Shown here piece by piece: positions 17,995-44,545 of a stretch of 64,000 nt of DNA (its first letter is position 1; each line of letters opens with the position of its first letter). A program made the position numbers and the translations under genes. Location of the stretch: the IMG/VR virus record IMGVR_UViG_3300036944_001289, positions 1-64,000 of that record. The stretch is one strand, 5' to 3'. The notes beneath the pieces were generated by a model, which had not been told where the DNA came from, made no database searches, and worked only from the letters and a program-made list of their open reading frames with translations.

Positions 17995-19050
17995 TTAAAC
18001 ACCGAATCCAATCTTACGAACTTGCTTCTCTTTGTATCCAGTATCATCACCGAGATTATACACTTCAGCAAGAGTCATTTCTTTATCAAAGACTACATCT
18101 CTACCAAGCGACTTTGCAAGTTTAGTTGCAGTAGCAGCATCGAGTTTACCAAAAGTATGGTCGATTGCAAGACGTCCTGGGCGAAGAAGTGCTTTATCAA
18201 CCTTATCTTTATCACCGTTATACGTAGCAACAATTTTAATATTGAGCATCGATCCAAGAATACCATCAGAGATATTAAGCAAAGTAGATACAGTGCTTAC
18301 ATTATGATCATCTTGTTCACGACTCTGCACAACCTTCTCTGAATCTTCAAGAATAAGTACCGAATCTTTATGTTCGAGTAGAAGAGACATAAAGTCTGGA
18401 GAGCTCAATTCACCTGCAAATGCTACTGGAATAAAAATAAACTCTTTATCAACAGCATTGGTCAGATACTTGATATATGAGCTTTTACCGCATCCTGGAG
18501 GTCCATGGAAGAACATAATAGAAGACTGCGGCTTATTAAGCTTTGAGACTACATTCTCATGAATCTTATTAAAGTTAGGACCATAGTTGATATTAATATC
18601 TTCTACTTTAATCGGATCAACTTTGATAGAGCGTGCTTCGAGTCCATACGCACCTTTAATTAGAATCGAAACTCTAGATGAGTTATCAGTAATCTTAAAC
18701 TTATCAAATTCGGTTATATCTGGTATAACATCTGTTGCGAAAAATAAGTTTATAGTAATTTCATCATTTGCACCTACGTAGATGATATAGTTTTTATAGT
18801 GAAAGTAGTATGAGTTATCTCTTCCATCTTGTTCATATACACGATATCTAATAAGCTTAGCTCGCTCACAAAGATAATCTAATAGTTTAACCTTATACTT
18901 TGTATCTGGCTTATAAGAACTTGCAAACTTATTTGTTAAACTAGAAATTAAGAATAAAGCAGGAAACTCATGACTGTCAATTTTAGCGGCATCGATAGGT
19001 AACAGAGTAGGGAAGTCTGTAAAAACTTCAGGTTGTTCGTTGAAGATCAT
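17995..19050 (-). CDS. AAA+ ATPase
   Basis: GPPGCGKS, ILEDSE, LLNISDG, DKALLRPGR. Confidence 0.9.
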   Translation of the reverse strand: MIFNEQPEVFTDFPTLLPIDAAKIDSHEFPALFLISSLTNKFASSYKPDTKYKVKLLDYLCERAKLIRYRVYEQDGRDNSYYFHYKNYIIYVGANDEITINLFFATDVIPDITEFDKFKITDNSSRVSILIKGAYGLEARSIKVDPIKVEDININYGPNFNKIHENVVSKLNKPQSSIMFFHGPPGCGKSSYIKYLTNAVDKEFIFIPVAFAGELSSPDFMSLLLEHKDSVLILEDSEKVVQSREQDDHNVSTVSTLLNISDGILGSMLNIKIVATYNGDKDKVDKALLRPGRLAIDHTFGKLDAATATKLAKSLGRDVVFDKEMTLAEVYNLGDDTGYKEKQVRKIGFGV

Positions 19051-20541: not shown

Positions 20542-21024
20542 TTAGCCATTAACTATTTGTAGGTCTTCGTGATTTAATACATAACCACCAGAATCACCTT
20601 GTTTGTATTTTTCTTCTTCACGTACTGTATATTCACCAGTATTTTCTTTAAACGAAGTAATGATGCATTTTTTACCCTTAACACTACTATACGGTCTGGT
20701 AACGACTACCTTTGTACCAACAGTATATGGTTGTATAGGGTTATTAATAAACCATTGTTCGAGCGCTTGTTTATAATGTTTGTCTAAAATAGACCAACCA
20801 TTGTCAAGTGCCTCGCATAATGGAAAATCTACAATCCAACCATCGTAATCTAATGCCTTGGCAAAATCATATGCATCTTGATGGTAAGATTTAATTAGTG
20901 AGTCAATAGCTTCATCTTCTTCTCCAAAGTCATCGAGTTTTGCTAGATGCTTTGTATAGAGCTCTTTCATTGCAGGCTCTAAAATCTCTTTATCAAGCTT
21001 AGTTGGTCTTTTGGTCATTTTCAA
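20542..21024 (-). CDS. hypothetical protein
   Basis: ORF in operon. Confidence 0.6.
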   Translation of the reverse strand: MKMTKRPTKLDKEILEPAMKELYTKHLAKLDDFGEEDEAIDSLIKSYHQDAYDFAKALDYDGWIVDFPLCEALDNGWSILDKHYKQALEQWFINNPIQPYTVGTKVVVTRPYSSVKGKKCIITSFKENTGEYTVREEEKYKQGDSGGYVLNHEDLQIVNG

Positions 21025-21454
21025 TTACCTTTTCGGTTTCAAGTACAATTACCCGTACAGGTTCTTTTGTTTTAATTTTTACGTTTACTTCTTGCTCTTT
21101 AGTAGTCTTTGACTTAATATAAGCAAATACATCTCTCCAAAGCTCAACAGCCCACTTCTTTTTCTTAAGGTTATTATTGTGTTTTGCTGTAGCAATCTTG
21201 AGTCTATCTACTAAAGTAGAGTCATCTTGCTCTTCTGGTGTCTGTACAATCCAGGCTTGTTGAATAACTTTCGCTACTTCAGCATCACCACGAATTAATA
21301 CAGTAAACTTAGACTTCTGTCTAGGTGCCTTCTCTTTATCTTCTTTTTCTGCATCAGCAGCCTCTTTGATATCTTTAATGATAGCAGAGCGCTTTTCTGG
21401 TTCAATTCCGTTTTGAATTAGTACTTCTTGAATATCGTCGATGTTTATTGCCAT
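20999..21454 (-). CDS. hypothetical protein
   Basis: 151-aa ORF. Confidence 0.65.
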   Translation of the reverse strand: MAINIDDIQEVLIQNGIEPEKRSAIIKDIKEAADAEKEDKEKAPRQKSKFTVLIRGDAEVAKVIQQAWIVQTPEEQDDSTLVDRLKIATAKHNNNLKKKKWAVELWRDVFAYIKSKTTKEQEVNVKIKTKEPVRVIVLETEKVIENDQKTN

Positions 21455-23653: not shown

Positions 23654-25183
23654 TTAAGCTTTGATTACTTCATAACGGTCACTACAAACTGTATCGATCA
23701 TCATGTTATAAGGTGTTGTTGATTTGTTAGACAAAACACTCTTCAAGATTGAAGGTGAACAGCCTGATACTAAGCAAGTACCTTTATCGTCATATTTAAC
23801 CGGTACATCACTATAAGAGTTAACATTCCAATATACAATTTGAGGCACGTTGTAACCAGCTGCAGCGTACTTTGCCTTAATAGCAGCATGATTAGTTACT
23901 TCACCGCTATTAAGAGAGTCTGGCCCGGTAGCACAATCAAATTGCATATCTGAGATAATATATACATGGGATGGCATTTCAGATTGCGGCACTTTATTAC
24001 TTACGCCTTTATCAAGTATAAGATCAAATACAGATTGTAGATTAGTATTAGCAACCTCACGTCTACCAAGAACATCAGTTACATTTTGTATTAGACTTGT
24101 ACCTGTAATCTTTAAAAGTTTAGCATTATGGGAGAAGATCATAAAATGATCTTTGAATGCACCTTCGTTTCGTTCAGCAAAATAAATTGCAATTGATACA
24201 GCAACATCAATAGGTGCTATGTTATTACCAATATTAGCATTATAATAGTTACAAGAGTCCATTGAAGCTGAAACGTCAGCTACAACAATACCATTATGCT
24301 TATTACCGGCAAGATAATCTGGTAAGGCCTTCCATTGGGCCTCTAGAGTACGATCTACGGACCGTATATTACGAACTGAACGTACAATATCATATGGGTA
24401 CAATACTGAAGCGTTAATCTTTTCTTCACCTTTCTCGACATTAGTTAAAAACTTTGAGTAACGGTCACCGTCATGTTCTTTGAATGCTTTACGGTAAGTG
24501 CTTGCAGCCTTTGAAGGTACCGCAGGATAATTGATCTTGTCCCATTCACCTACACACATTTTGCGTTCCACTACATCGATCTTTTTACGAAGAGCTGATA
24601 GAAGCTTACGATATTGCTTTGGAGAGTAATCTAAAGTAGTACGTACTTTCTTTGCAAGACGTTTGGTTACAGAAGATGAAGCCTGTTCACTTGGTGCCCA
24701 TTTAGCACATAGTGAAGGATTCTTTTCAGATGCATCTTCAATAAGTTTATCAGCAACAAATTTAAGTGCGATTTTTTCAAGAGATGTACCTTCAAGCGTC
24801 TCAAGTACGTTGTCCCAACGAGTAAACTCAGGGATCTGGATCAAGAGGTTCTTAGCTACTTTCTCATCGTTTTGCGCAAGCCACTTAAAGCAGTTACGGA
24901 AGAGCTTACGCTCACCTTGACCTTCACGTACATCTACTAGATAGAAGAGAATCTTAAGAGCGATAGTCTTATCCTCATTATAAGCGGAGCGGAAAAGTGT
25001 AATAGATGCATCATCTGGTTGTGAACGCATTGAACCACCTTTACCAAAAAAATCGAGCAAAGAAGTACCAGTAGTCGAATGACTTACCGCACCATTATGC
25101 GTCTTGATATCTCCTGTAGTTAAAGCACTGATAAGTGCGTTTTGCTTAGGAGCTGTCTTTTTGATTGTTTTTTTAGTTGCCAT
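23654..25183 (-). CDS. DUF2828/TROVE (Ro60-like) protein with C-terminal vWA domain
   Basis: T.NGA.SHSTTG..LLDFF, D.R.GQGER, SLCAKWAPSE, VE.KMC..W..INY..VPS.A, LYPYDIV, MIDAS DVSASM, ISDMQFD, IVYWN. Confidence 0.8.
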   Translation of the reverse strand: MATKKTIKKTAPKQNALISALTTGDIKTHNGAVSHSTTGTSLLDFFGKGGSMRSQPDDASITLFRSAYNEDKTIALKILFYLVDVREGQGERKLFRNCFKWLAQNDEKVAKNLLIQIPEFTRWDNVLETLEGTSLEKIALKFVADKLIEDASEKNPSLCAKWAPSEQASSSVTKRLAKKVRTTLDYSPKQYRKLLSALRKKIDVVERKMCVGEWDKINYPAVPSKAASTYRKAFKEHDGDRYSKFLTNVEKGEEKINASVLYPYDIVRSVRNIRSVDRTLEAQWKALPDYLAGNKHNGIVVADVSASMDSCNYYNANIGNNIAPIDVAVSIAIYFAERNEGAFKDHFMIFSHNAKLLKITGTSLIQNVTDVLGRREVANTNLQSVFDLILDKGVSNKVPQSEMPSHVYIISDMQFDCATGPDSLNSGEVTNHAAIKAKYAAAGYNVPQIVYWNVNSYSDVPVKYDDKGTCLVSGCSPSILKSVLSNKSTTPYNMMIDTVCSDRYEVIKA

Positions 25184-25189
25184 AATTCT

Positions 25190-25219
25190 AAGTATATTTT
25201 TTGTTTGCTGTCGATACTT
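25190..25219 (-). promoter_or_regulatory. CAGCAA-motif hairpin filling the 5' UTR of the DUF2828-like gene
   Basis: AAGTAT-CGA-CAGCAA-ACAAAAAAT-ATACTT, ending 6 nt before the ATG; same motif as four RNAs in the tRNA array. Confidence 0.7.
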
Positions 25220-25249
25220 CAGTTTTATTTTATATATGTTCCTTATTAA

Positions 25250-25697: not shown

Positions 25698-26951
25698 TTA
25701 TTCGTAGTCAGATAACTTAAATATTTTAGACTCTTTTGGTATATAATGTCTATAATTATCAGATAAAAACCAGTACCAACGTTCTGGCTTCTCTGGTTTA
25801 ACTGTATCACCATAACCATCAGTGATTAAAAATACAGCTTTAGGGTATTTAATCTTTTCAGATTTAATAGTATTTTGTATCTTAGATTCTATAATACTAA
25901 AAGAAGTACCTCCACCGCCGTACACTTTATTCTGTTTGATATCAATCTCTACAACAGAGGTATCAAAGCAAAATAAACGAACATTAAACCTATTAGGATT
26001 TAAACTACGTGCAGCAGTAAAGAAGCGATCTTTTAACCCAATACAAGAACCAGATGTATCTAAAAAGAACCATACATCAATCTTATGATTGTCTTTAAAA
26101 TCATCTAAGATCCAATTCTCAGTAGGTAGTGATATATCACTAGATAGTAATTGAGAGTATTTAGGAGTTACTCTCTCCCATCGTTCTAACGTATTGATAG
26201 TATCTTTATTAAACTGACTTTCCCATTTCTTAATAACAGTCTCCCACTTGTACTTCTTTTTTCTTAACGAATTTACAGTAAGCCATGAACCTGTGCCTTT
26301 ACCTGCAGCAGAGTTCTTTAATTTTTGCGTATCAACAGTTGATGGTAGTTTATTGGTAAATGATTCATCTAGTTTATCAAGAATACCAGAAGCATCTATC
26401 AAATCTTTCATCTGTTGTTGCTGTTCGGGAGTTAATACTTTATGAGAGTCTATAGCAAAGTATTTGTTCTCTTTATCTTTAGGTAGTCTATTAAAATAGT
26501 ATTCTGTAGATTGATTAGGTAAGCAATTTTTATCATTTTTGAATACCGTATCCATCCAGCAACCTTTTTCACTTAGATCATTATTCAGTTCAATTCTCTT
26601 AAAACTAAATGAACTTACTAAAGTCTCGTTAATAACTACATCGGCAGCTATATTCATATTACTAAATTCTTGTGTACCTATATACTCAGAGAATCTATAA
26701 CCATGCTCTAATAGAATGTGTAAAATCTCATGACAAACTAAAAAGAGTTTAGTTTCTTCGTTTAGAGAATTCCAAAAATCTTCATTTATCATCAAGTTAA
26801 GATGATTGCCTTGATCATCAAAGGTAATCGCAGCAGTAGGTAAATCATCAAACTTACCTACTATGGGGTTACCTATATCCCAAAAAGCTCTAAAGAAATA
26901 GTGATAACTTTGGAGCTTTTGAGATATTTCTAACCGTTCTTGATAGTTCAT
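25698..26951 (-). CDS. Metallopeptidase-like (HExxH) + vWA protein (DUF2201-like)
   Basis: PTAA, CHEILH, NIAADVVIN, DTSGSC, GGGGTSF, ITDGYG. Confidence 0.82.
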   Translation of the reverse strand: MNYQERLEISQKLQSYHYFFRAFWDIGNPIVGKFDDLPTAAITFDDQGNHLNLMINEDFWNSLNEETKLFLVCHEILHILLEHGYRFSEYIGTQEFSNMNIAADVVINETLVSSFSFKRIELNNDLSEKGCWMDTVFKNDKNCLPNQSTEYYFNRLPKDKENKYFAIDSHKVLTPEQQQQMKDLIDASGILDKLDESFTNKLPSTVDTQKLKNSAAGKGTGSWLTVNSLRKKKYKWETVIKKWESQFNKDTINTLERWERVTPKYSQLLSSDISLPTENWILDDFKDNHKIDVWFFLDTSGSCIGLKDRFFTAARSLNPNRFNVRLFCFDTSVVEIDIKQNKVYGGGGTSFSIIESKIQNTIKSEKIKYPKAVFLITDGYGDTVKPEKPERWYWFLSDNYRHYIPKESKIFKLSDYE

Positions 26952-38022: not shown

Positions 38023-38101
38023 TGGTGGGGGCAACCGGAATGCGAGCCGGCATTTTACCTGTGAGAGAGGTATGTCCTTTACGTTTTTAGACGATGTCCC
38101 C
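38023..38101 (-). tRNA. tRNA-Glu(CUC), atypical T-loop
   Basis: TACCT-CT CTC AC-AGGTA, CCA. Confidence 0.75.
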
Positions 38102-41091: not shown

Positions 41092-41479
41092 TGGTGGAGG
41101 TGGCGGGAATTGAACCCGCGTGTTTAACCCAAACCTCACTATTATCTACAAGCTTAGTAGTATTTAATAACTATTTTAAGGTATACTACAACCTGTAGAT
41201 AGTGGTATACATTTATATACTAGAGAATCCCAATGTATAACTGACTCTCTAATCTCACTATATAACGAAATTAAATTTTAGTGAGAATCAAATCTAGTTT
41301 CGATCGCTGTTTATTAAGCAGCGAATGCAAGGGCCTCAACAGGAGCAGCGCTCTTGAAGAAGTTCTTGATGTAATTTACAATGTTGCCATTTGTAGTTTT
41401 GATACTAGTTATAGAGATAATATCAATCTCTGCTTGCAAATAGAGCTGTATCGAATTAAGTCGAATCCTGTACACCCCC
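41092..41479 (-). ncRNA. ssrA: tmRNA
   Basis: 5' GGGGGTGTACAGGATTCGAC, 3' CGCGGGTTCAATTCCCGCCACCTCCACCA with G3:U70; internal tag ORF ...GNIVNYIKNFFKSAAPVEALAFAA*. Confidence 0.93.
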
Positions 41480-41688: not shown

Positions 41689-41767
41689 TGGTGCATCAGA
41701 TGGGATTTTAACCCATGTAAATCTCGTTAAGAGCGAGGACCGTTAAACGAACTCCGGGCACTGATGC
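41689..41767 (-). tRNA. tRNA-Lys(CUU)
   Basis: CTCG-CT CTT AA-CGAG, CCA. Confidence 0.8.
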
Positions 41768-42169: not shown

Positions 42170-42176
42170 ATAAAAA

Positions 42177-42266
42177 TTTATATCTAATGTTCTACCATGT
42201 TGAACTATCCTCCTTGTTCTATTGGGTAAGAGAGGAGCGGACCTTGAACCCGCATCTTTAGATAAA
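42177..42266 (-). ncRNA. Circularly permuted tRNA-like RNA without anticodon
   Basis: ATCTAA, T-arm GCGGG-TTCAAGG-TCCGC, TCCTC/GAGGA acceptor closed by a loop, D-arm GTTC-AACATGGTA-GAAC, TTAGAT. Confidence 0.7.
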
Positions 42267-42406: not shown

Positions 42407-42493
42407 TGGTGCGTCGGGAGGGACTCGAACCCTCGATGGGTTTAAACCGTGAGCTTAAAAGGCTCGACCTTTCGCCGCTAAGGGAACCGACGC
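42407..42493 (-). tRNA. tRNA-Lys(UUU) with long variable arm
   Basis: GAGC-CT TTT AA-GCTC, then CGGTTTAAACCCATC extra arm. Confidence 0.75.
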
Positions 42494-42502
42494 GTAAAAA
42501 AC

Positions 42503-42640
42503 TAAGTATATTTTTTGCGTTTACTGTGCTACCGTTACACTACTCTCCAATAAAGTATAAATTGGGTGGAGAGGTGGGAATTGAACCCACACTAGCATCT
42601 GTATATGATGATTGCGTTTTATTTTTGCTGTATATACTTA
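42503..42640 (-). ncRNA. Y-RNA-like (YrlA-architecture) RNA: CAGCAA terminal stem + permuted tRNA domain
   Basis: TAAGTATA/TATACTTA stem, TACAGCAA, T-arm GTGGG-TTCAATT-CCCAC, CTCTCCA/TGGAGAG acceptor closed by a loop, D-arm GTGT-AACGGTA-GCAC. Confidence 0.8.
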
Positions 42641-42643
42641 AAG

Positions 42644-42722
42644 TGGTACCCTAGGTGAGATTCGAACTCACACTGAAGAGTGTTTAAGACTCTGGCCATA
42701 CTACCAATTGGGCTACTAGGGC
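42644..42722 (-). tRNA. tRNA-Leu(UAA), short variable loop
   Basis: AGAGT-CT TAA AC-ACTCT, CCA. Confidence 0.85.
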
Positions 42723-42731
42723 GTAAAAAAA

Positions 42732-42807
42732 TGGAGTCTCGTATAGGAATTGAACCTATGTAATTTCTTTTGCAGAGAAAAGCCTGTAACCACTCGACCA
42801 ACGAGAC
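42732..42807 (-). tRNA. tRNA-Cys(GCA), second copy
   Basis: TTTCT-CT GCA AA-AGAAA, U73, CCA. Confidence 0.87.
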
Positions 42808-42813
42808 ATAAAA

Positions 42814-42890
42814 TGGTACCGATGAGCGGGATCGAACCGCCAAGCTTCTCCGTGAAAGGGAGGTGTCCTAACCAATTAGACGACATCGGC
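42814..42890 (-). tRNA. tRNA-Glu(UUC)
   Basis: CTCC-CT TTC AC-GGAG, CCA. Confidence 0.87.
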
Positions 42891-42902
42891 ATAAAAAATT
42901 TC

Positions 42903-42964
42903 AAAGTCCGTTTTTAGCTTGTATTGATTAATATTCAATTGCTTTTGATTGCTGTGCGGACTTT
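42903..42964 (-). ncRNA. CAGCAA-motif small RNA 1
   Basis: AAAGTCCG-CA-CAGCAA...AAAAA-CGGACTTT. Confidence 0.7.
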
Positions 42965-42970
42965 TATTAC

Positions 42971-43024
42971 TAAGTTCAGCTTTTTGTTGTATTCAATGAC
43001 ATTTAGTATTGCTGGATGAACTTA
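42971..43024 (-). ncRNA. CAGCAA-motif small RNA 2
   Basis: TAAGTTCA-TC-CAGCAA...AAAAAGC-TGAACTTA. Confidence 0.7.
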
Positions 43025-43027
43025 AAT

Positions 43028-43099
43028 TGGGTGCAGCGCTGGTACTCGAAACCAGAGAAGGTAGCTTATGAGACTCCTTGGGCAACCTGCCTCACTGCA
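43028..43099 (-). tRNA. tRNA-Met(CAU), atypical short D-arm
   Basis: CT CAT AA loop, TGCAGTG/CGCTGCA acceptor, CCA. Confidence 0.65.
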
Positions 43100-43167
43100 A
43101 TAAATTGGCGATGTAACTAATCTGAAATATTGACTTGTAAGCGTTCTTACCGTTACATTATTAAATA

Positions 43168-43243
43168 TGGTGGTAGAGGTGAGACTTGAACTCACAAATA
43201 AGAGCTTATGAAACTCTTGCCTAAACCGTTCGGCCTCTCTACC
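43168..43243 (-). tRNA. tRNA-Met/Ile2(CAU)
   Basis: AGAGT-TT CAT AA-GCTCT, CCA. Confidence 0.85.
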
Positions 43244-43244
43244 A

Positions 43245-43338
43245 TGGTAGTCAGGGAGGGAATTGAACCCTCGCTCGGCACCAATCTAGTGCTCACGGTT
43301 TATAAGGCCGTCGATGCTTCCAATTACATTACCTGACT
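43245..43338 (-). tRNA. tRNA-Ile(UAU) with long variable arm
   Basis: ACGG-C-CT TAT AA-A-CCGT, V-arm GCACTA-GAT-TGGTGC, CCA. Confidence 0.8.
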
Positions 43339-43344
43339 ATAAAA

Positions 43345-43418
43345 TGGCTGAGATGGCTGGTAACGCTCCAACTTCTTCGGGGTCAAAGTCCGAGGTAATA
43401 CTTTTATACGACATCTCA
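43345..43418 (-). tRNA. tRNA-Gln(UUG)
   Basis: U1:A72, CT TTG AC loop, G73, CCA. Confidence 0.82.
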
Positions 43419-43425
43419 ATAAAAT

Positions 43426-43511
43426 TGGTACGGTGTGAAGGAGTTGAACCTTCAAGGCTCATGCAGTCTAAATGCATACTGTCTGCCAAATTCCAGCTTA
43501 ACCAACACCGT
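43426..43511 (-). tRNA. tRNA-Leu(UAG), second copy, enlarged D region, no long V-arm
   Basis: ATGCA-TT TAG AC-TGCAT, CCA. Confidence 0.72.
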
Positions 43512-43518
43512 AATAAAA

Positions 43519-43592
43519 TGGTCCTCCACCTCGGTTACGCTCCGAGTCCTTTCCGCCCCAAACGGGAAATGCTACTATAACACCTGTGAAGG
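43519..43592 (-). tRNA. tRNA-Pro(UGG)
   Basis: CCG-TT TGG GG-CGG, C1:G72, A73, CCA. Confidence 0.78.
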
Positions 43593-43599
43593 ATAAAAA

Positions 43600-43675
43600 T
43601 GGCGATGGTACGGGGAAATTGAACCCCGACTTGAACAGTGACAGTGTTCTGTGCAAACCTTTACACTATACCATC
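43600..43675 (-). tRNA. tRNA-Asp(GUC)
   Basis: GAACA-CT GTC AC-TGTTC, G73, CCA. Confidence 0.88.
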
Positions 43676-43683
43676 GTAAAAAC

Positions 43684-43737
43684 TAAGTCCATTTATTTAC
43701 CTTATTGTAGTATTTTAATGGTTGCTGTCTGGACTTA
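43684..43737 (-). ncRNA. CAGCAA-motif small RNA 3
   Basis: TAAGTCCA-GA-CAGCAA...AATAAA-TGGACTTA. Confidence 0.7.
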
Positions 43738-43741
43738 AAAA

Positions 43742-44545
43742 TTATTTGATAGAGAAGTATTTTTTCCATTGTTTATATCTTGGAGATCCACCTTCTCGTT
43801 TATTAGCACCTTTATAAAATTGAGATAGTGAATGGCAGTTTGGACACAACAACTCTAAATTATCTGGAATGTTATTAATGCAATTACCATCTTTATGTTC
43901 TAACTCGATCGGTACTTTACCTGAAAAAGGATTTACTTCGGACCAACCACATTTCATACACCTTGGTCCAAATTTGCGAATTAAGTATCTTCTATATATT
44001 GTGTTATTTGTTTCAATATTTTGAGAAATAACCTTTCCTTCGATTAATAGTGGTTCTAATTCTTTTTCACGCTGGTTTTTTCTGTGTTCAGAAGAGCATA
44101 TTTGTTCACAAAATATTGACGTTTTTGCTACCGGTAAGAAGTCTCGTTCACAATTTAAACACTTTTTGTATTCTTTATATCTTAATGCAGGACCTCTTTT
44201 AAGGAAGCGATTATTGCTAATAAAATTTTCTGTATTTTTATGAACTTTGTTACAAACTCTTGTCTTGTTGATTGTTGTAGCAGCACAACTATTAGAGCAA
44301 AATTTATTTTCGTAACTAAAAAAGGAAATGTTACATGTCAGGCATACTTTTGTATTTTCTTCTATTATTTTTTGCTTTTCTTTTTCTTTACAAGAAGGAC
44401 AATCAAATTTATCTACGTTATGTTTTATATTATGCTTAATATAAATTTTAAGTCTTTTGGTTTCTGTTCCACAATCTTTACACCAGCAAGTAACTGAATC
44501 TTTATTTGTCGCGTTATCGAATTCTTCTTGGTTGAATTTATACAT
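43742..44545 (-). mobile_element. Free-standing HNH homing endonuclease in the tRNA array
   Basis: Multiple CxxC motifs; C..CGW...ELEHKDGN..NN...NLELLCPNCHS. Confidence 0.85.

What the first reader, a model, noticed from the sequence alone, without database searches (positions are those of the whole stretch)
42503..43737. Family of AAGU-NN-CAGCAA hairpin RNAs: a Ro60/Y-RNA-like system built on a DUF2828 protein
Seen: four elements in the tRNA array (42503-42640, 42903-42964, 42971-43024, 43684-43737) share an 8-bp terminal stem starting (T/A)AAGT and ending ACTT(A/T). The inner pairs vary compensatorily (ATA/TAT, CCG/CGG, TCA/TGA, CCA/TGG). Two nt after the stem comes an invariant CAGCAA, and an A-rich tract precedes the 3' strand. 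The longest element carries a permuted tRNA domain, as in bacterial YrlA Y RNAs. A fifth copy is the 5' UTR of the TROVE-like/vWA gene at 23654-25183. Established: Ro60/TROVE proteins bind Y RNAs through a conserved terminal helix and are linked to RNA repair and decay; the YrlA-type Ro-binding consensus (GNCGAA-like) differs from this one. Inference: CAGCAA is the binding site of the DUF2828-type protein, and these RNAs are its Y-RNA equivalents, co-transcribed with the tRNAs.
Basis: partly seen in the sequence, partly recalled or inferred. Interest (0 to 1): 0.85.

Follow-up and report, generated by a model that had tools for sequence, protein, structure and literature searches.

The report
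Phage Y-RNA-like partners of Ro60-like protein
This phage carries small hairpin RNAs with an invariant ACAGCAA motif, one fused to a circularly permuted tRNA, and the same RNAs sit beside a Ro60-shaped "DUF2828" protein gene in phages of many unrelated bacteria, which points to a widespread Ro/Y-RNA-type particle that I could not find described.

Summary
AAGT-N5-CAGCAA occurs 5 times in the window, all on the tRNA strand, against 0.17 expected. Each copy sits in a terminal stem whose inner pairs covary.

The same design occurs next to the DUF2828/DUF7788 gene, on its strand. The design is a stem, 1-3 nt, (A)CAGCAA, an A-rich tract and the 3' strand. It appears in 10 of 11 named phages: Felixounavirus, KVP40, and Listeria, Staphylococcus, Enterococcus, Bacillus, Campylobacter, Mycobacterium and Synechococcus phages. 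It also appears in most of 80 IMG/VR loci and 80 genome-collection loci.

A covariance model of the long form supports four helices: terminal stem, T arm, closed acceptor and D arm. About 90% of cells pair and 22 of 23 pairs show compensatory changes.

A search starting from the RNA pattern alone recovers DUF2828 genes in 34 of 117 loci. A scrambled motif recovers 1 of 120.

An AlphaFold model of the protein (pLDDT 84) matches Ro60 structures over its full length, with no sequence-level match.

Rfam's YrlA model matches only the tRNA-like module of one relative, below threshold. It does not match the window at all.

Verdict: a new variant of the Ro60/Y-RNA kind. Protein binding and autoregulation through the leader copy are inferred, not shown.

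The parts
42503..42640 (-). El1, the long form. It has a terminal stem, ACAGCAA, a small hairpin, a T arm, a loop-closed acceptor stem, a D arm, an A-rich tract and the 3' strand. It lies 3 nt after tRNA-Leu and 9 nt before tRNA-Lys.
   Evidence: Sequence. Fold. Covariance model R1: 85.5 bits, E 6e-14. Pattern hit.
42903..42964 (-). El2, a short form. Stem AAAGUCCG/CGGACUUU, then CA, then CAGCAA. It has an internal 5-bp hairpin with a 7-nt loop and an A-rich tract. It lies 12 nt upstream of tRNA-Glu.
   Evidence: z -3.6. R1 local match 24.0 bits.
42971..43024 (-). El3, a short form. Stem UAAGUUCA/UGAACUUA, then UC, then CAGCAA. It is in tandem with El2, separated by a 6-nt spacer.
   Evidence: z only -1.4. 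R1 local match 21.7 bits.
43684..43737 (-). El4, a short form. Stem UAAGUCCA/UGGACUUA, then GA, then CAGCAA. It starts 4 nt after the stop of ORF 43742-44545 and ends 8 nt upstream of tRNA-Asp.
   Evidence: z -3.9. R1 local match 24.2 bits.
25189..25220 (-). El5, a mini copy in the leader of the DUF2828 gene: AAGUAU-CGA-CAGCAA-ACAAAAAAU-AUACUU. It ends 6 nt before the AUG. It is a candidate operator.
   Evidence: R1 gives only 13.6 bits, E 1.5. Comparable mini hairpins abut the SD/AUG in L067, L055, L024, L025 and L012.
23654..25183 (-). Gene for the 509-aa DUF2828 + DUF7788 protein: an alpha-helical repeat domain followed by a vWA domain with an invariant DxSxS MIDAS motif. Its fold is Ro60-like.
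   Evidence: Pfam. PHROG 850 'RNA-binding protein'. AlphaFold pLDDT 84. Foldseek top 5 hits are all Ro60. Invariant D303, S305, S307.
42176..42263 (-). A second permuted tRNA-like module (T arm, closed acceptor, D arm) with no CAGCAA and no terminal stem. Whether it belongs to the family is uncertain.
   Evidence: R1 28.2 bits, matching model positions 40-111 only. Sequence.

Best explanation
The four elements in the tRNA array are small non-coding RNAs. They are transcribed with the tRNAs and released by tRNA processing.

They belong to a large phage RNA family with a fixed design. The 5' and 3' ends form a terminal helix, commonly AAGNNNN...NNNNCUU followed by G. One to three unpaired nucleotides follow, and then an invariant single-stranded (A)CAGCAA. 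A G-poor linker and usually a small hairpin come next. An A-rich tract faces the motif across an internal loop.

Long forms also carry a tRNA-like body, usually a circularly permuted tRNA.

I infer that the motif and the helix are the docking site of the phage's Ro60-shaped DUF2828/DUF7788 protein. These RNAs would then be that protein's Y-RNA equivalents. The tRNA-like module of the long form would recruit tRNA-acting enzymes or mimic tRNA.

The mini copy just before the protein's start codon would let surplus protein bind its own message and block translation. This part is the most speculative.

Shown: the motif, the structure, the covariation, the genomic linkage and the Ro60-like fold.
Inferred: binding, processing, autoregulation and biological role. 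The role is plausibly tRNA/RNA surveillance or counter-defence.
For: Motif enrichment in the window: 5 hits against 0.17 expected.

The same design lies beside the DUF2828 gene, on its strand, in Felixounavirus, KVP40, and Bacillus, Listeria, Mycobacterium, Campylobacter, Staphylococcus, Synechococcus and Enterococcus phages.

In 91 loci (1.73 Mb) there are 275 same-strand hits and 85 opposite-strand hits. Within 3 kb of the gene the counts are 183 and 30.

Of the 18 single-base variants of CAGCAA, only AAGCAA (58 vs 22), CAGAAA (71 vs 33), GAGCAA (23 vs 10) and CAGCAG (24 vs 12) show a same-strand excess of about two-fold or more, all much weaker than CAGCAA itself at 156 vs 25.

RNAalifold on a MAFFT alignment of 15 long forms gives four helices, with 20 of 23 pairs compensatory. 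89.9% of cells pair, against 40-49% in the slid controls.

Model R1 gives 50 hits. 49 are on the DUF2828 strand, and the remaining hit is a tandem-tRNA false positive in T4. In that 50-sequence alignment 22 of 23 pairs are compensatory.

Reverse search from the RNA pattern: 34 of 117 loci hold DUF2828, against 1 of 120 for the scrambled motif. Fisher p = 5e-11.

Genome-collection loci: 130 same-strand against 9 opposite-strand hits.

The protein model matches Ro60 over its full length.

YrlA matches the tRNA-like module of the JoeDirt element.

In 19 of 91 loci a motif hairpin ends no more than 31 nt before the start codon. Several of these abut the SD.

The PhageMaP preprint (PMC11482910) reports that Bas63 gp130 is structurally like Ro60 and counters the Ppl defence. 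It speculates that Y RNAs hide among the adjacent tRNA genes. Bas63 is a Felixounavirus, and gp130 sits directly upstream of its tRNA genes, as the DUF2828 gene does in pinkbiff. I did not check that gp130 is a DUF2828 homologue.
Against: There are no binding or expression data. No RNA-seq run holds this phage.

The protein has no detectable sequence similarity to Ro60/TROVE.

The array elements lie 17-19 kb from the protein gene in this window, although they are adjacent to it in most relatives.

24 of 91 viral loci, including Xanthomonas phage XbC2, show no strict-motif hairpin within 3 kb of the gene.

El3 and El5 are not significant by folding energy alone.

El5 also fits a weak sigma-70-like pattern.

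The short forms were found with a scanner that requires a stem, so their covariation is partly circular. The strand asymmetry is the independent support for them.
Confidence: 0.75

Rival explanations
1. The hairpins are cis-acting processing or punctuation signals of tRNA operons, for example RNase III or RNase E sites, or spacers. They have no dedicated protein partner and appear linked to DUF2828 only because that gene tends to sit near tRNA arrays.
For: In the window the elements lie 3-12 nt from tRNAs. 56 of 286 elements are within 30 nt of a same-strand tRNA. 767 of 774 tRNAs in DUF2828 loci lie on the gene's strand.
Against: The T4 and T5 tRNA arrays have no such hairpin on the tRNA strand. 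The scrambled-motif control also hits tRNA-rich loci (404 tRNAs) yet finds DUF2828 in only 1 of 120. In the Staphylococcus, Campylobacter, mycobacteriophage and Bacillus loci the elements lie immediately beside the gene, with no tRNA annotated in those stretches, or only one about 2 kb away. An invariant single-stranded hexamer plus whole tRNA-like bodies is more than a cleavage site needs.
Confidence: 0.08
2. The RNAs are real and are linked to the DUF2828 locus, but the conserved ACAGCAA is read by something else. Candidates are a host factor (PNPase, Hfq, a CCA-adding or modification enzyme, the ribosome) or another phage protein. The Ro60-like protein would then bind elsewhere or bind other RNAs.
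For: Co-occurrence cannot say which molecule touches the motif. Canonical Ro60 recognises a bulged helix, not a single-stranded hexamer (PMC4201824, PMC12135203). RNA ligase, RtcB or polynucleotide kinase genes lie in the same loci in the Listeria, Xanthomonas and Mycobacterium phages.
Against: DUF2828 is the only gene I found linked to the elements across hosts as different as Campylobacter, Mycobacterium and Synechococcus, although neighbour sharing was not tabulated systematically. A mini copy sits at the protein's own start codon.
Confidence: 0.12
3. The elements are decayed tRNA genes or repeat debris from recombination in the tRNA array, and CAGCAA is a chance remnant.
For: Long forms contain tRNA arms. 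KVP40 and Synechococcus B23 annotate 'pseudo' or 'undetermined' tRNAs in the same regions.
Against: Short forms have no tRNA arms. The motif is invariant across distant phages while the stems covary. The strand bias is strong. The permuted order of the arms is itself conserved.
Confidence: 0.02
4. The leader copy El5 is not an operator. It is either a promoter-like sequence or just one more co-transcribed RNA gene that happens to lie upstream of the ORF.
For: TCGACA-N18-TAGAAT (10 of 12 positions) overlaps El5. In many relatives, ordinary full-size elements lie 50-150 nt upstream of the gene.
Against: The promoter-like count is at chance: 4 found against 3.0 expected. The -10 hexamer ends 2 nt before the ATG, so a transcript from it would lack the start codon's context. 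Mini hairpins that abut the SD or AUG recur in unrelated loci: L067, L055, L024, L025 and L012.
Confidence: 0.4

Closest known systems
Bacterial and phage YrlA Y RNAs with Ro60/Rsr (Rfam RF02553; Chen et al. 2014, PMC4201824)
   Same: The RNA ends pair into a terminal helix next to a short conserved motif. The RNA carries a tRNA-like module with a T arm, a loop-closed acceptor-like stem and a D arm. Genes lie on the same strand as, and usually beside, a ring-plus-vWA protein gene. Several RNA genes per locus, long and short, occur as with YrlA and YrlB. The YrlA model aligns to the tRNA-like module of the JoeDirt element at 39.8 bits.
   Different: The motif is single-stranded ACAGCAA rather than GNCGAAN0-1G. 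No CGAA is visible in the window's five elements (by eye). The window gets no YrlA hit at E<=10, and the relative scores below the gathering score of 69. A separate hairpin precedes the T arm, so the module reads as a full circularly permuted tRNA. Some relatives carry a non-permuted D/anticodon/T core. The partner protein is DUF2828/DUF7788, not Pfam TROVE.
Ro60 / TROVE2 proteins (PDB 1yvr, 2i91, 9nep; Thermus phage phiLo Ro60, 9l5y)
   Same: Full-length structural match of helical repeats plus a C-terminal vWA domain: Foldseek E 5e-6 to 1e-5, probability 1.0, TM 0.50-0.58. The MIDAS DxSxS motif is conserved.
   Different: Identity is 12-16%. There is no Pfam TROVE hit. Neither phmmer nor a profile search hits Ro60 chains in the PDB. 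Whether the model forms a closed ring with a central hole was not examined.
Bas63 gp130 (PhageMaP preprint, PMC11482910)
   Same: Bas63 is a Felixounavirus. gp130 sits directly upstream of the tRNA genes, as the DUF2828 gene does in pinkbiff. The authors report structural similarity to Ro60 and suggest that some nearby 'tRNA' genes could be Y RNAs.
   Different: That paper identifies no RNA. Here the candidate RNAs are non-tRNA hairpins plus one permuted tRNA between the tRNA genes. I did not verify that gp130 is a DUF2828 homologue. The Ppl counter-defence phenotype has not been tested for this phage.
Stable RNAs of unknown function in the T4 and T5 tRNA clusters (rnaC, rnaD; T5 RNAI, RNAIII, RNA1, RNA2)
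   Same: They are small stable RNAs encoded between phage tRNA genes. Some are annotated as tRNA-like.
   Different: There is no CAGCAA hairpin and no R1 hit on the tRNA strand of either region. From my own knowledge these phages have no DUF2828 gene; I did not check this genome-wide.
Autogenous translational operators that mimic the protein's RNA ligand (ribosomal-protein leaders; the thrS tRNA-like operator). Cited from general knowledge.
   Same: A reduced copy of the ligand is placed over the ribosome-binding region of the protein's own mRNA.
   Different: For El5 this is inferred only from position and sequence.

Membership tests
YrlA / bacterial Y RNA (Rfam RF02553) | Scores at or above the Rfam gathering score (69 bits) | tested here: not met
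   The window has no YrlA match, even at E<=10. The JoeDirt homologue scores 39.8 bits.
YrlA / bacterial Y RNA (Rfam RF02553) | GNCGAAN0-1G motif near the 5' end, the presumed Ro60 contact (PMC4201824) | tested here: not met
   The five window elements carry ACAGCAA at that place and show no CGAA. In the YrlA alignment of JoeDirt, the 5' motif region aligns poorly.
YrlA / bacterial Y RNA (Rfam RF02553) | tRNA-like module: T arm, loop-closed acceptor-like stem, D arm | tested here: met
   Met for the long form El1 and 49 relatives. Not present in short forms El2-El5.
YrlA / bacterial Y RNA (Rfam RF02553) | Encoded within a few kb of the Ro60-type gene, on the same strand | tested here: met
   Same strand throughout. 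El5 is adjacent to the gene. El1-El4 are 17-19 kb away in this window, but the elements are adjacent to the gene in most relatives.
YrlA / bacterial Y RNA (Rfam RF02553) | Physically bound by the Ro60-type protein | not testable with these tools
   Needs RIP/CLIP or EMSA.
Ro60 / TROVE protein family (Pfam PF05731) | Significant match to the TROVE profile or to Ro60 sequences | tested here: not met
   Pfam returns only DUF7788 and DUF2828 at E<=0.1. There is no PDB sequence hit with the single sequence or with a 37-sequence profile.
Ro60 / TROVE protein family (Pfam PF05731) | Helical-repeat domain plus C-terminal vWA domain with a MIDAS motif, superposable on Ro60 | tested here: met
   AlphaFold pLDDT 84, pTM 0.84. 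The top five PDB matches are Ro60 chains over 512-572 alignment columns. DxSxS is invariant.
Pfam DUF2828 + DUF7788 / PHROG 850 | Profile match above the curated threshold | tested here: met
   DUF7788 150.9 bits, DUF2828 135.5 bits. phrog_850 E 3e-139.
Intrinsic terminators | GC-rich hairpin followed by a U run | tested here: not met
   The terminator scan calls none of the elements. Only 42 of 286 family members have a T-rich tail.

The most novel reading that the evidence does not exclude
DUF2828/DUF7788 proteins and ACAGCAA RNAs form a second, ancient branch of Ro/Y ribonucleoproteins that has its own RNA code. In this reading phages use it to handle damaged or attacked tRNAs, or to present tRNA decoys that blunt host defences. 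The modular tRNA-like inserts (permuted, non-permuted or absent) would select the client or the enzyme. A ligand-mimic leader would autoregulate the protein. Pfam describes DUF2828 as also present in eukaryotes (from my memory of the Pfam entry; not checked here). If so, the same logic might point to unknown RNA partners there.
Probability: 0.3. Interest if true: 0.9.

Novelty: new variant of a known kind. Interest (0 to 1): 0.8.

Why it matters
Ro60/Y-RNA particles are known from animals, about 5% of bacteria and a few phages, always with TROVE-type Ro60 and a CGAA-type motif.

Here a different protein family with the same fold is paired with a different, sharply defined RNA motif. tblastn finds that protein family in 705 phage records, including Felix O1-like, KVP40-like, Listeria, Staphylococcus, Enterococcus and Campylobacter phages.

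This gives concrete candidate ligands for a protein that one preprint (PMC11482910) reports as a counter-defence factor. It also explains unannotated gaps in several phage tRNA arrays, and it may explain some 'pseudo-tRNA' annotations. It supplies a conserved hexamer that can be mutated directly in cultured phages.

It also shows that tRNA mimicry by Y-like RNAs comes in several interchangeable architectures.

Tried and rejected
- **Megablast of the tRNA region against phage records:** no match. Distant blastn found only tRNA-sized hits.
- **Exact-peptide search of IMG/VR:** found only the window's own contig.
- **Single-sequence AlphaFold:** unusable, pLDDT 42. Replaced by the MSA-based model.
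- **phmmer and profile search against PDB sequences:** no Ro60 hit.
- **MAFFT alignment of short forms (A4):** the 3' strands are left ragged, so I built no short-form covariance model. Short forms rest on the motif-anchored scanner and its strand controls.
- **Cognate versus non-cognate terminal-stem test on regex-selected long forms:** uninformative, mean best stem 6.4 against 6.0. The stems share AAG/CUU ends and the search window was wide.
- **RNA-seq evidence:** only DNA runs of shale-gas and freshwater metagenomes hold the sequence, so I laid no reads.
- **R1 hit at 21140-21199 (-):** lies inside an ORF and has no convincing stem. Treated as chance.
- **R1 hit in T4:** this is the tRNA-Gly/tRNA-Leu junction, a tandem-tRNA artefact.
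- **Supplementary tables of Chen 2014:** not held, so I could not see which 22 phages they scored.
Full report
**Source and orientation.** The window is part of a 209-kb IMG/VR phage contig from a shale-gas metagenome. It has no close relative among sequenced phages. ARAGORN finds 24 tRNAs, and Rfam adds a tmRNA and a few more tRNAs. All lie on the minus strand between 37.5 and 45 kb. The finding therefore has to be read on the minus strand.

- AAGT-N5-CAGCAA matches five times, all on the minus strand, against 0.17 expected. None of 100 shuffles reached five.
- The four tRNA-array copies are closed by 8-9 bp terminal stems.
- The outer pairs of those stems are conserved ((U/A)AAGU...ACUU(A/U)).
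- One to two nucleotides separate the stem from CAGCAA. An A-rich tract precedes the 3' strand, and a G usually follows it.
- By folding energy alone, El3 (z -1.4) and the leader copy (z +0.9) are not significant.
- El1 contains a T arm, an acceptor stem closed by a loop, and a D arm, in that order. It is a permuted tRNA.
- The fifth copy (25189-25220) is a 32-nt mini hairpin whose two ends are almost identical to El1's ends. It stops 6 nt before the ATG of the 509-aa gene at 23654-25183.

**Position relative to tRNAs.** Each array element lies a few nucleotides from neighbouring tRNAs. El1 is 3 nt after tRNA-Leu and 9 nt before tRNA-Lys. El2 is 12 nt before tRNA-Glu. El4 is 8 nt before tRNA-Asp. 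Co-transcription and release by tRNA-processing enzymes is therefore plausible, but it is inferred. The terminator scan calls none of the elements.

**The protein.**
- Pfam assigns DUF2828 plus DUF7788 and no TROVE domain. PHROGs assigns family 850, 'RNA-binding protein'.
- tblastn finds homologues at 31-43% identity in 705 phage records. These include Felixounavirus, KVP40-like vibriophages, and Listeria, Staphylococcus, Enterococcus, Bacillus, Campylobacter and Aeromonas phages. They also include cluster L mycobacteriophages, where annotators call the gene 'Ro-like RNA binding protein'.
- Sequence searches against the PDB find nothing, with either the single sequence or a 37-sequence profile.
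- A single-sequence AlphaFold model was useless.
- With the alignment the model reaches pLDDT 84 and pTM 0.84.
- Its five best PDB matches are all Ro60: Xenopus Ro60 with and without RNA, the Ro60/pre-5S complex, and the Thermus phage phiLo Ro60. They align over the full length with E about 5e-6 and TM 0.50-0.58. After these come only isolated vWA domains at E about 1e-2.
- The vWA MIDAS motif DxSxS is invariant in the family.
- So the protein is Ro60-like in architecture but is not a detectable member of the TROVE sequence family.

**The decisive evidence is comparative.** A simple scanner looked for CAGCAA preceded by 1-4 nt (1-3 nt in the later counts) and a stem whose partner lies downstream. 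It found the same design next to the DUF2828 gene, on its strand, in 10 of the 11 named phages I fetched:

| Phage | Elements found |
|---|---|
| Felixounavirus pinkbiff | Three short and one long, immediately downstream of the gene, between the first tRNAs |
| KVP40 | One short and one long |
| Bacillus PJN02 | Five |
| Listeria LP-124 | Three, just upstream of the gene |
| Mycobacteriophage JoeDirt | Short-long-short, just downstream of the gene |
| Campylobacter CP30A | Two, just upstream of the gene |
| Staphylococcus S-CoN_Ph6 | Three, just downstream of the gene |
| Synechococcus B23 | Two |
| Enterococcus Porthos | Two |
| Xanthomonas XbC2 | None found |

Stem sequences differ between phages (AGACCNN, AAGACAC, TAGGAAN, TGGACTC and others), while ACAGCAA stays the same.

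**Counts across loci.**
- In these loci plus 80 IMG/VR loci fetched through the protein (1.73 Mb in all), the scanner finds 275 same-strand and 85 opposite-strand hits. Within 3 kb of the gene the counts are 183 and 30. 67 of 91 loci have at least one hit.
- With stems of at least 8 bp, CAGCAA gives 156 same-strand hits against 25 opposite-strand. AAGCAA gives 58 against 22, CAGAAA 71 against 33, GAGCAA 23 against 10 and CAGCAG 24 against 12. The other single-base variants show no clear excess.
- Lengths are bimodal, at 50-70 nt and 110-130 nt. Position -1 is A in 63% of elements, and the 10 nt after the motif are nearly free of G.
- In 80 loci from the bacterial and archaeal genome collection, the counts are 130 same-strand against 9 opposite-strand. 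These are mostly MAG contigs of Clostridia, with some archaeal bins.

**Structure of the long form.**
- A MAFFT alignment of 15 long forms from different phages, folded by RNAalifold, gives a 7-bp terminal stem, a 5-bp T arm, a 7-bp closed acceptor and a 4-bp D arm. 20 of 23 pairs show double changes.
- 89.9% of cells pair, against 40-49% when partners are slid by 1-3 columns. The covariation score is 0.77 against 0.21 or less.
- A covariance model built from this alignment (R1) finds 50 matches at E<=0.01 in 1.8 Mb. 49 are on the DUF2828 strand. The remaining hit is the tRNA-Gly/tRNA-Leu junction of T4, a known kind of artefact. There are no matches in the T5 tRNA region.
- On the 50-sequence model-based alignment, 22 of 23 pairs show compensatory changes.
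- With filters off, R1 ranks El1 first in the central 28 kb of the window (85.5 bits). The three short elements come at ranks 3-5 through local matches to the stem and the motif.
- Between the motif and the T arm, most long forms have a further small hairpin with a loop of 6-8 nt, usually 7. Most short forms keep only that hairpin.
- Read this way, the long form is a tRNA opened between the D arm and the anticodon arm. This reading rests on inspection only.
- Some genome-collection loci instead carry a non-permuted D/anticodon/T core, with the CAGCAA stem in the place of the acceptor stem.

**Co-occurrence, tested from the RNA side.**
- An exact-pattern scan of IMG/VR for ACAGCAA-N22-50-GGTTCGANTCC uses no protein information. 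It returned 117 new loci with a median length of 7.5 kb. 34 of these contain a DUF2828 homologue. All 24 of the first batch that I checked have it on the same strand, mostly within 2 kb.
- The same scan with the motif scrambled to AACGACA returned 120 loci, of which 1 contains the gene. The odds ratio is 49 and Fisher p is 5e-11.
- R1 confirms 101 long forms in the first 100 motif-derived loci.
- Many of these loci are short pieces of contigs longer than 100 kb, so 34 of 117 is a lower bound.

**Relation to known RNAs.**
- Rfam 15 has no family match in the window at gathering scores, nor at E<=10 over the array.
- The JoeDirt long form hits YrlA (RF02553) at 39.8 bits, below the threshold of 69. 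The match runs through the T arm, acceptor and D arm. The 5' part that carries YrlA's GNCGAA motif aligns poorly.
- Published Y RNAs of bacteria and phages are all defined by a CGAA-type motif next to a canonical TROVE Ro60 (PMC4201824, PMC12135203). These include mycobacteriophages, CcrColossus, Bacillus phage G and Thermus phiLo.
- The only statement I found that links this protein family to Y RNAs is a speculation in the PhageMaP preprint. It says Bas63 gp130 resembles Ro60, counters the Ppl defence system, and that 'some tRNA genes are possibly Y RNAs' (PMC11482910). I did not verify that gp130 is a DUF2828 homologue.
- The term DUF2828 appears in five held papers, none of them about RNA.
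- I therefore regard the RNA family as undescribed in the held literature and in Rfam. I cannot exclude a description in a paper that is not held.

**Mechanism.**
- Shown: a conserved, strand-specific, covarying RNA design with an invariant single-stranded hexamer, tightly linked to a Ro60-shaped protein gene across very distant phages.
- Inferred, by analogy with Ro60/Y RNA: the helix and the hexamer dock the protein, and the tRNA-like module engages tRNA-recognising factors or mimics tRNA.
- The same loci often hold RNA-repair genes, which fits a role in tRNA/RNA damage handling or counter-defence. This is context, not proof. Examples are RtcB and RNA ligase in Listeria LP-124, an RNA ligase next to the gene in XbC2, and RNA ligase and polynucleotide kinase in JoeDirt.

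**The leader copy.**
- In 19 of 91 loci a motif hairpin ends no more than 31 nt before the start codon. Mini hairpins abut the Shine-Dalgarno sequence or the AUG in L067, L055, L024, L025 and L012.
- Several loci that include Synechococcus phage B23 (L009, L013, L019, L021, L022) share a conserved leader hairpin, AAGTTGAT...ATCAACTT, with a degenerate motif directly before GGAG-ATG.
- This is what an autogenous translational operator would look like, but it needs a reporter test.
- El5 also fits a weak promoter pattern. That pattern is at chance frequency, and its -10 hexamer ends 2 nt before the ATG.

**Limits.**
- There are no expression or binding data.
- The short-form evidence depends on a stem-requiring scanner, controlled by strand and by motif variants rather than by a covariance model.
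- About a quarter of DUF2828 loci show no strict-motif hairpin nearby.
- The Ro60 relation is structural only.
- Absence of DUF2828 from T4 and T5 rests on my own knowledge and was not checked genome-wide.

Noticed in passing
window 41092-41479 (-): A phage-encoded tmRNA (Rfam RF00023, 133.9 bits, full length) sits inside the tRNA array.
   Followed up: no
window 42176-42263 (-): A second permuted tRNA-like module (T arm, closed acceptor, D arm) with no CAGCAA and no terminal stem. ACAGTGA stands roughly where the motif would be. It may be a decayed or divergent family member.
   Followed up: partly
window 41692-41767, 38026-38101, 43348-43418, 43025-43167 (-): Rfam calls three tRNAs that ARAGORN misses. 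The 143-nt gap at 43025-43167 looks tRNA-like by eye. ARAGORN's tRNA-Ile(tat) (94 nt, 43245-43338) and tRNA-Lys (87 nt, 42407-42493) are unusually long for their class.
   Followed up: no
window 25698-26951 (-) and 17995-19050 (-): The gene just upstream of the DUF2828 gene has a DUF2201_N putative metallopeptidase domain, and an AAA ATPase lies nearby. Both are common companions of vWA proteins. Whether they are linked to the Ro-like protein is unknown.
   Followed up: no
L349 2827-2932; L355 5669-5762; L365 4596-4689; L366 4354-4448; L370 4024-4120: In loci from the genome collection (mostly Clostridia MAG contigs), the CAGCAA hairpin encloses a non-permuted tRNA core (D arm, anticodon arm, T arm). 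The terminal stem takes the place of the acceptor stem.
   Followed up: partly
L009, L013, L019, L021, L022 (60-80 nt before the DUF2828 start): These loci, which include Synechococcus phage B23, share a leader hairpin AAGTTGAT...ATCAACTT with a degenerate motif (CAGCAT, CAGCAG, CAGCTT). It lies directly in front of the GGAG/ATG of the DUF2828 gene.
   Followed up: partly
L003 504-616, 627-750, 2301-2416 (KVP40); L009 21854-21963 (Synechococcus B23): Records annotate 110-124-nt 'tRNA-Pseudo' or 'tRNA-Undet' genes near the DUF2828 gene. They could be divergent long forms, but R1 did not hit them at E<=0.01.
   Followed up: no
all DUF2828 loci (L002-L091, L331-L410, window): 767 of 774 ARAGORN tRNAs lie on the DUF2828 strand. 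A G follows the 3' strand of the hairpin in 163 of 286 elements.
   Followed up: partly
window 21140-21199 (-): An R1 match (21.6 bits, E 0.049) with ACAGCAAAAC lies inside ORF 20999-21454. There is no convincing stem, so it is probably chance.
   Followed up: yes
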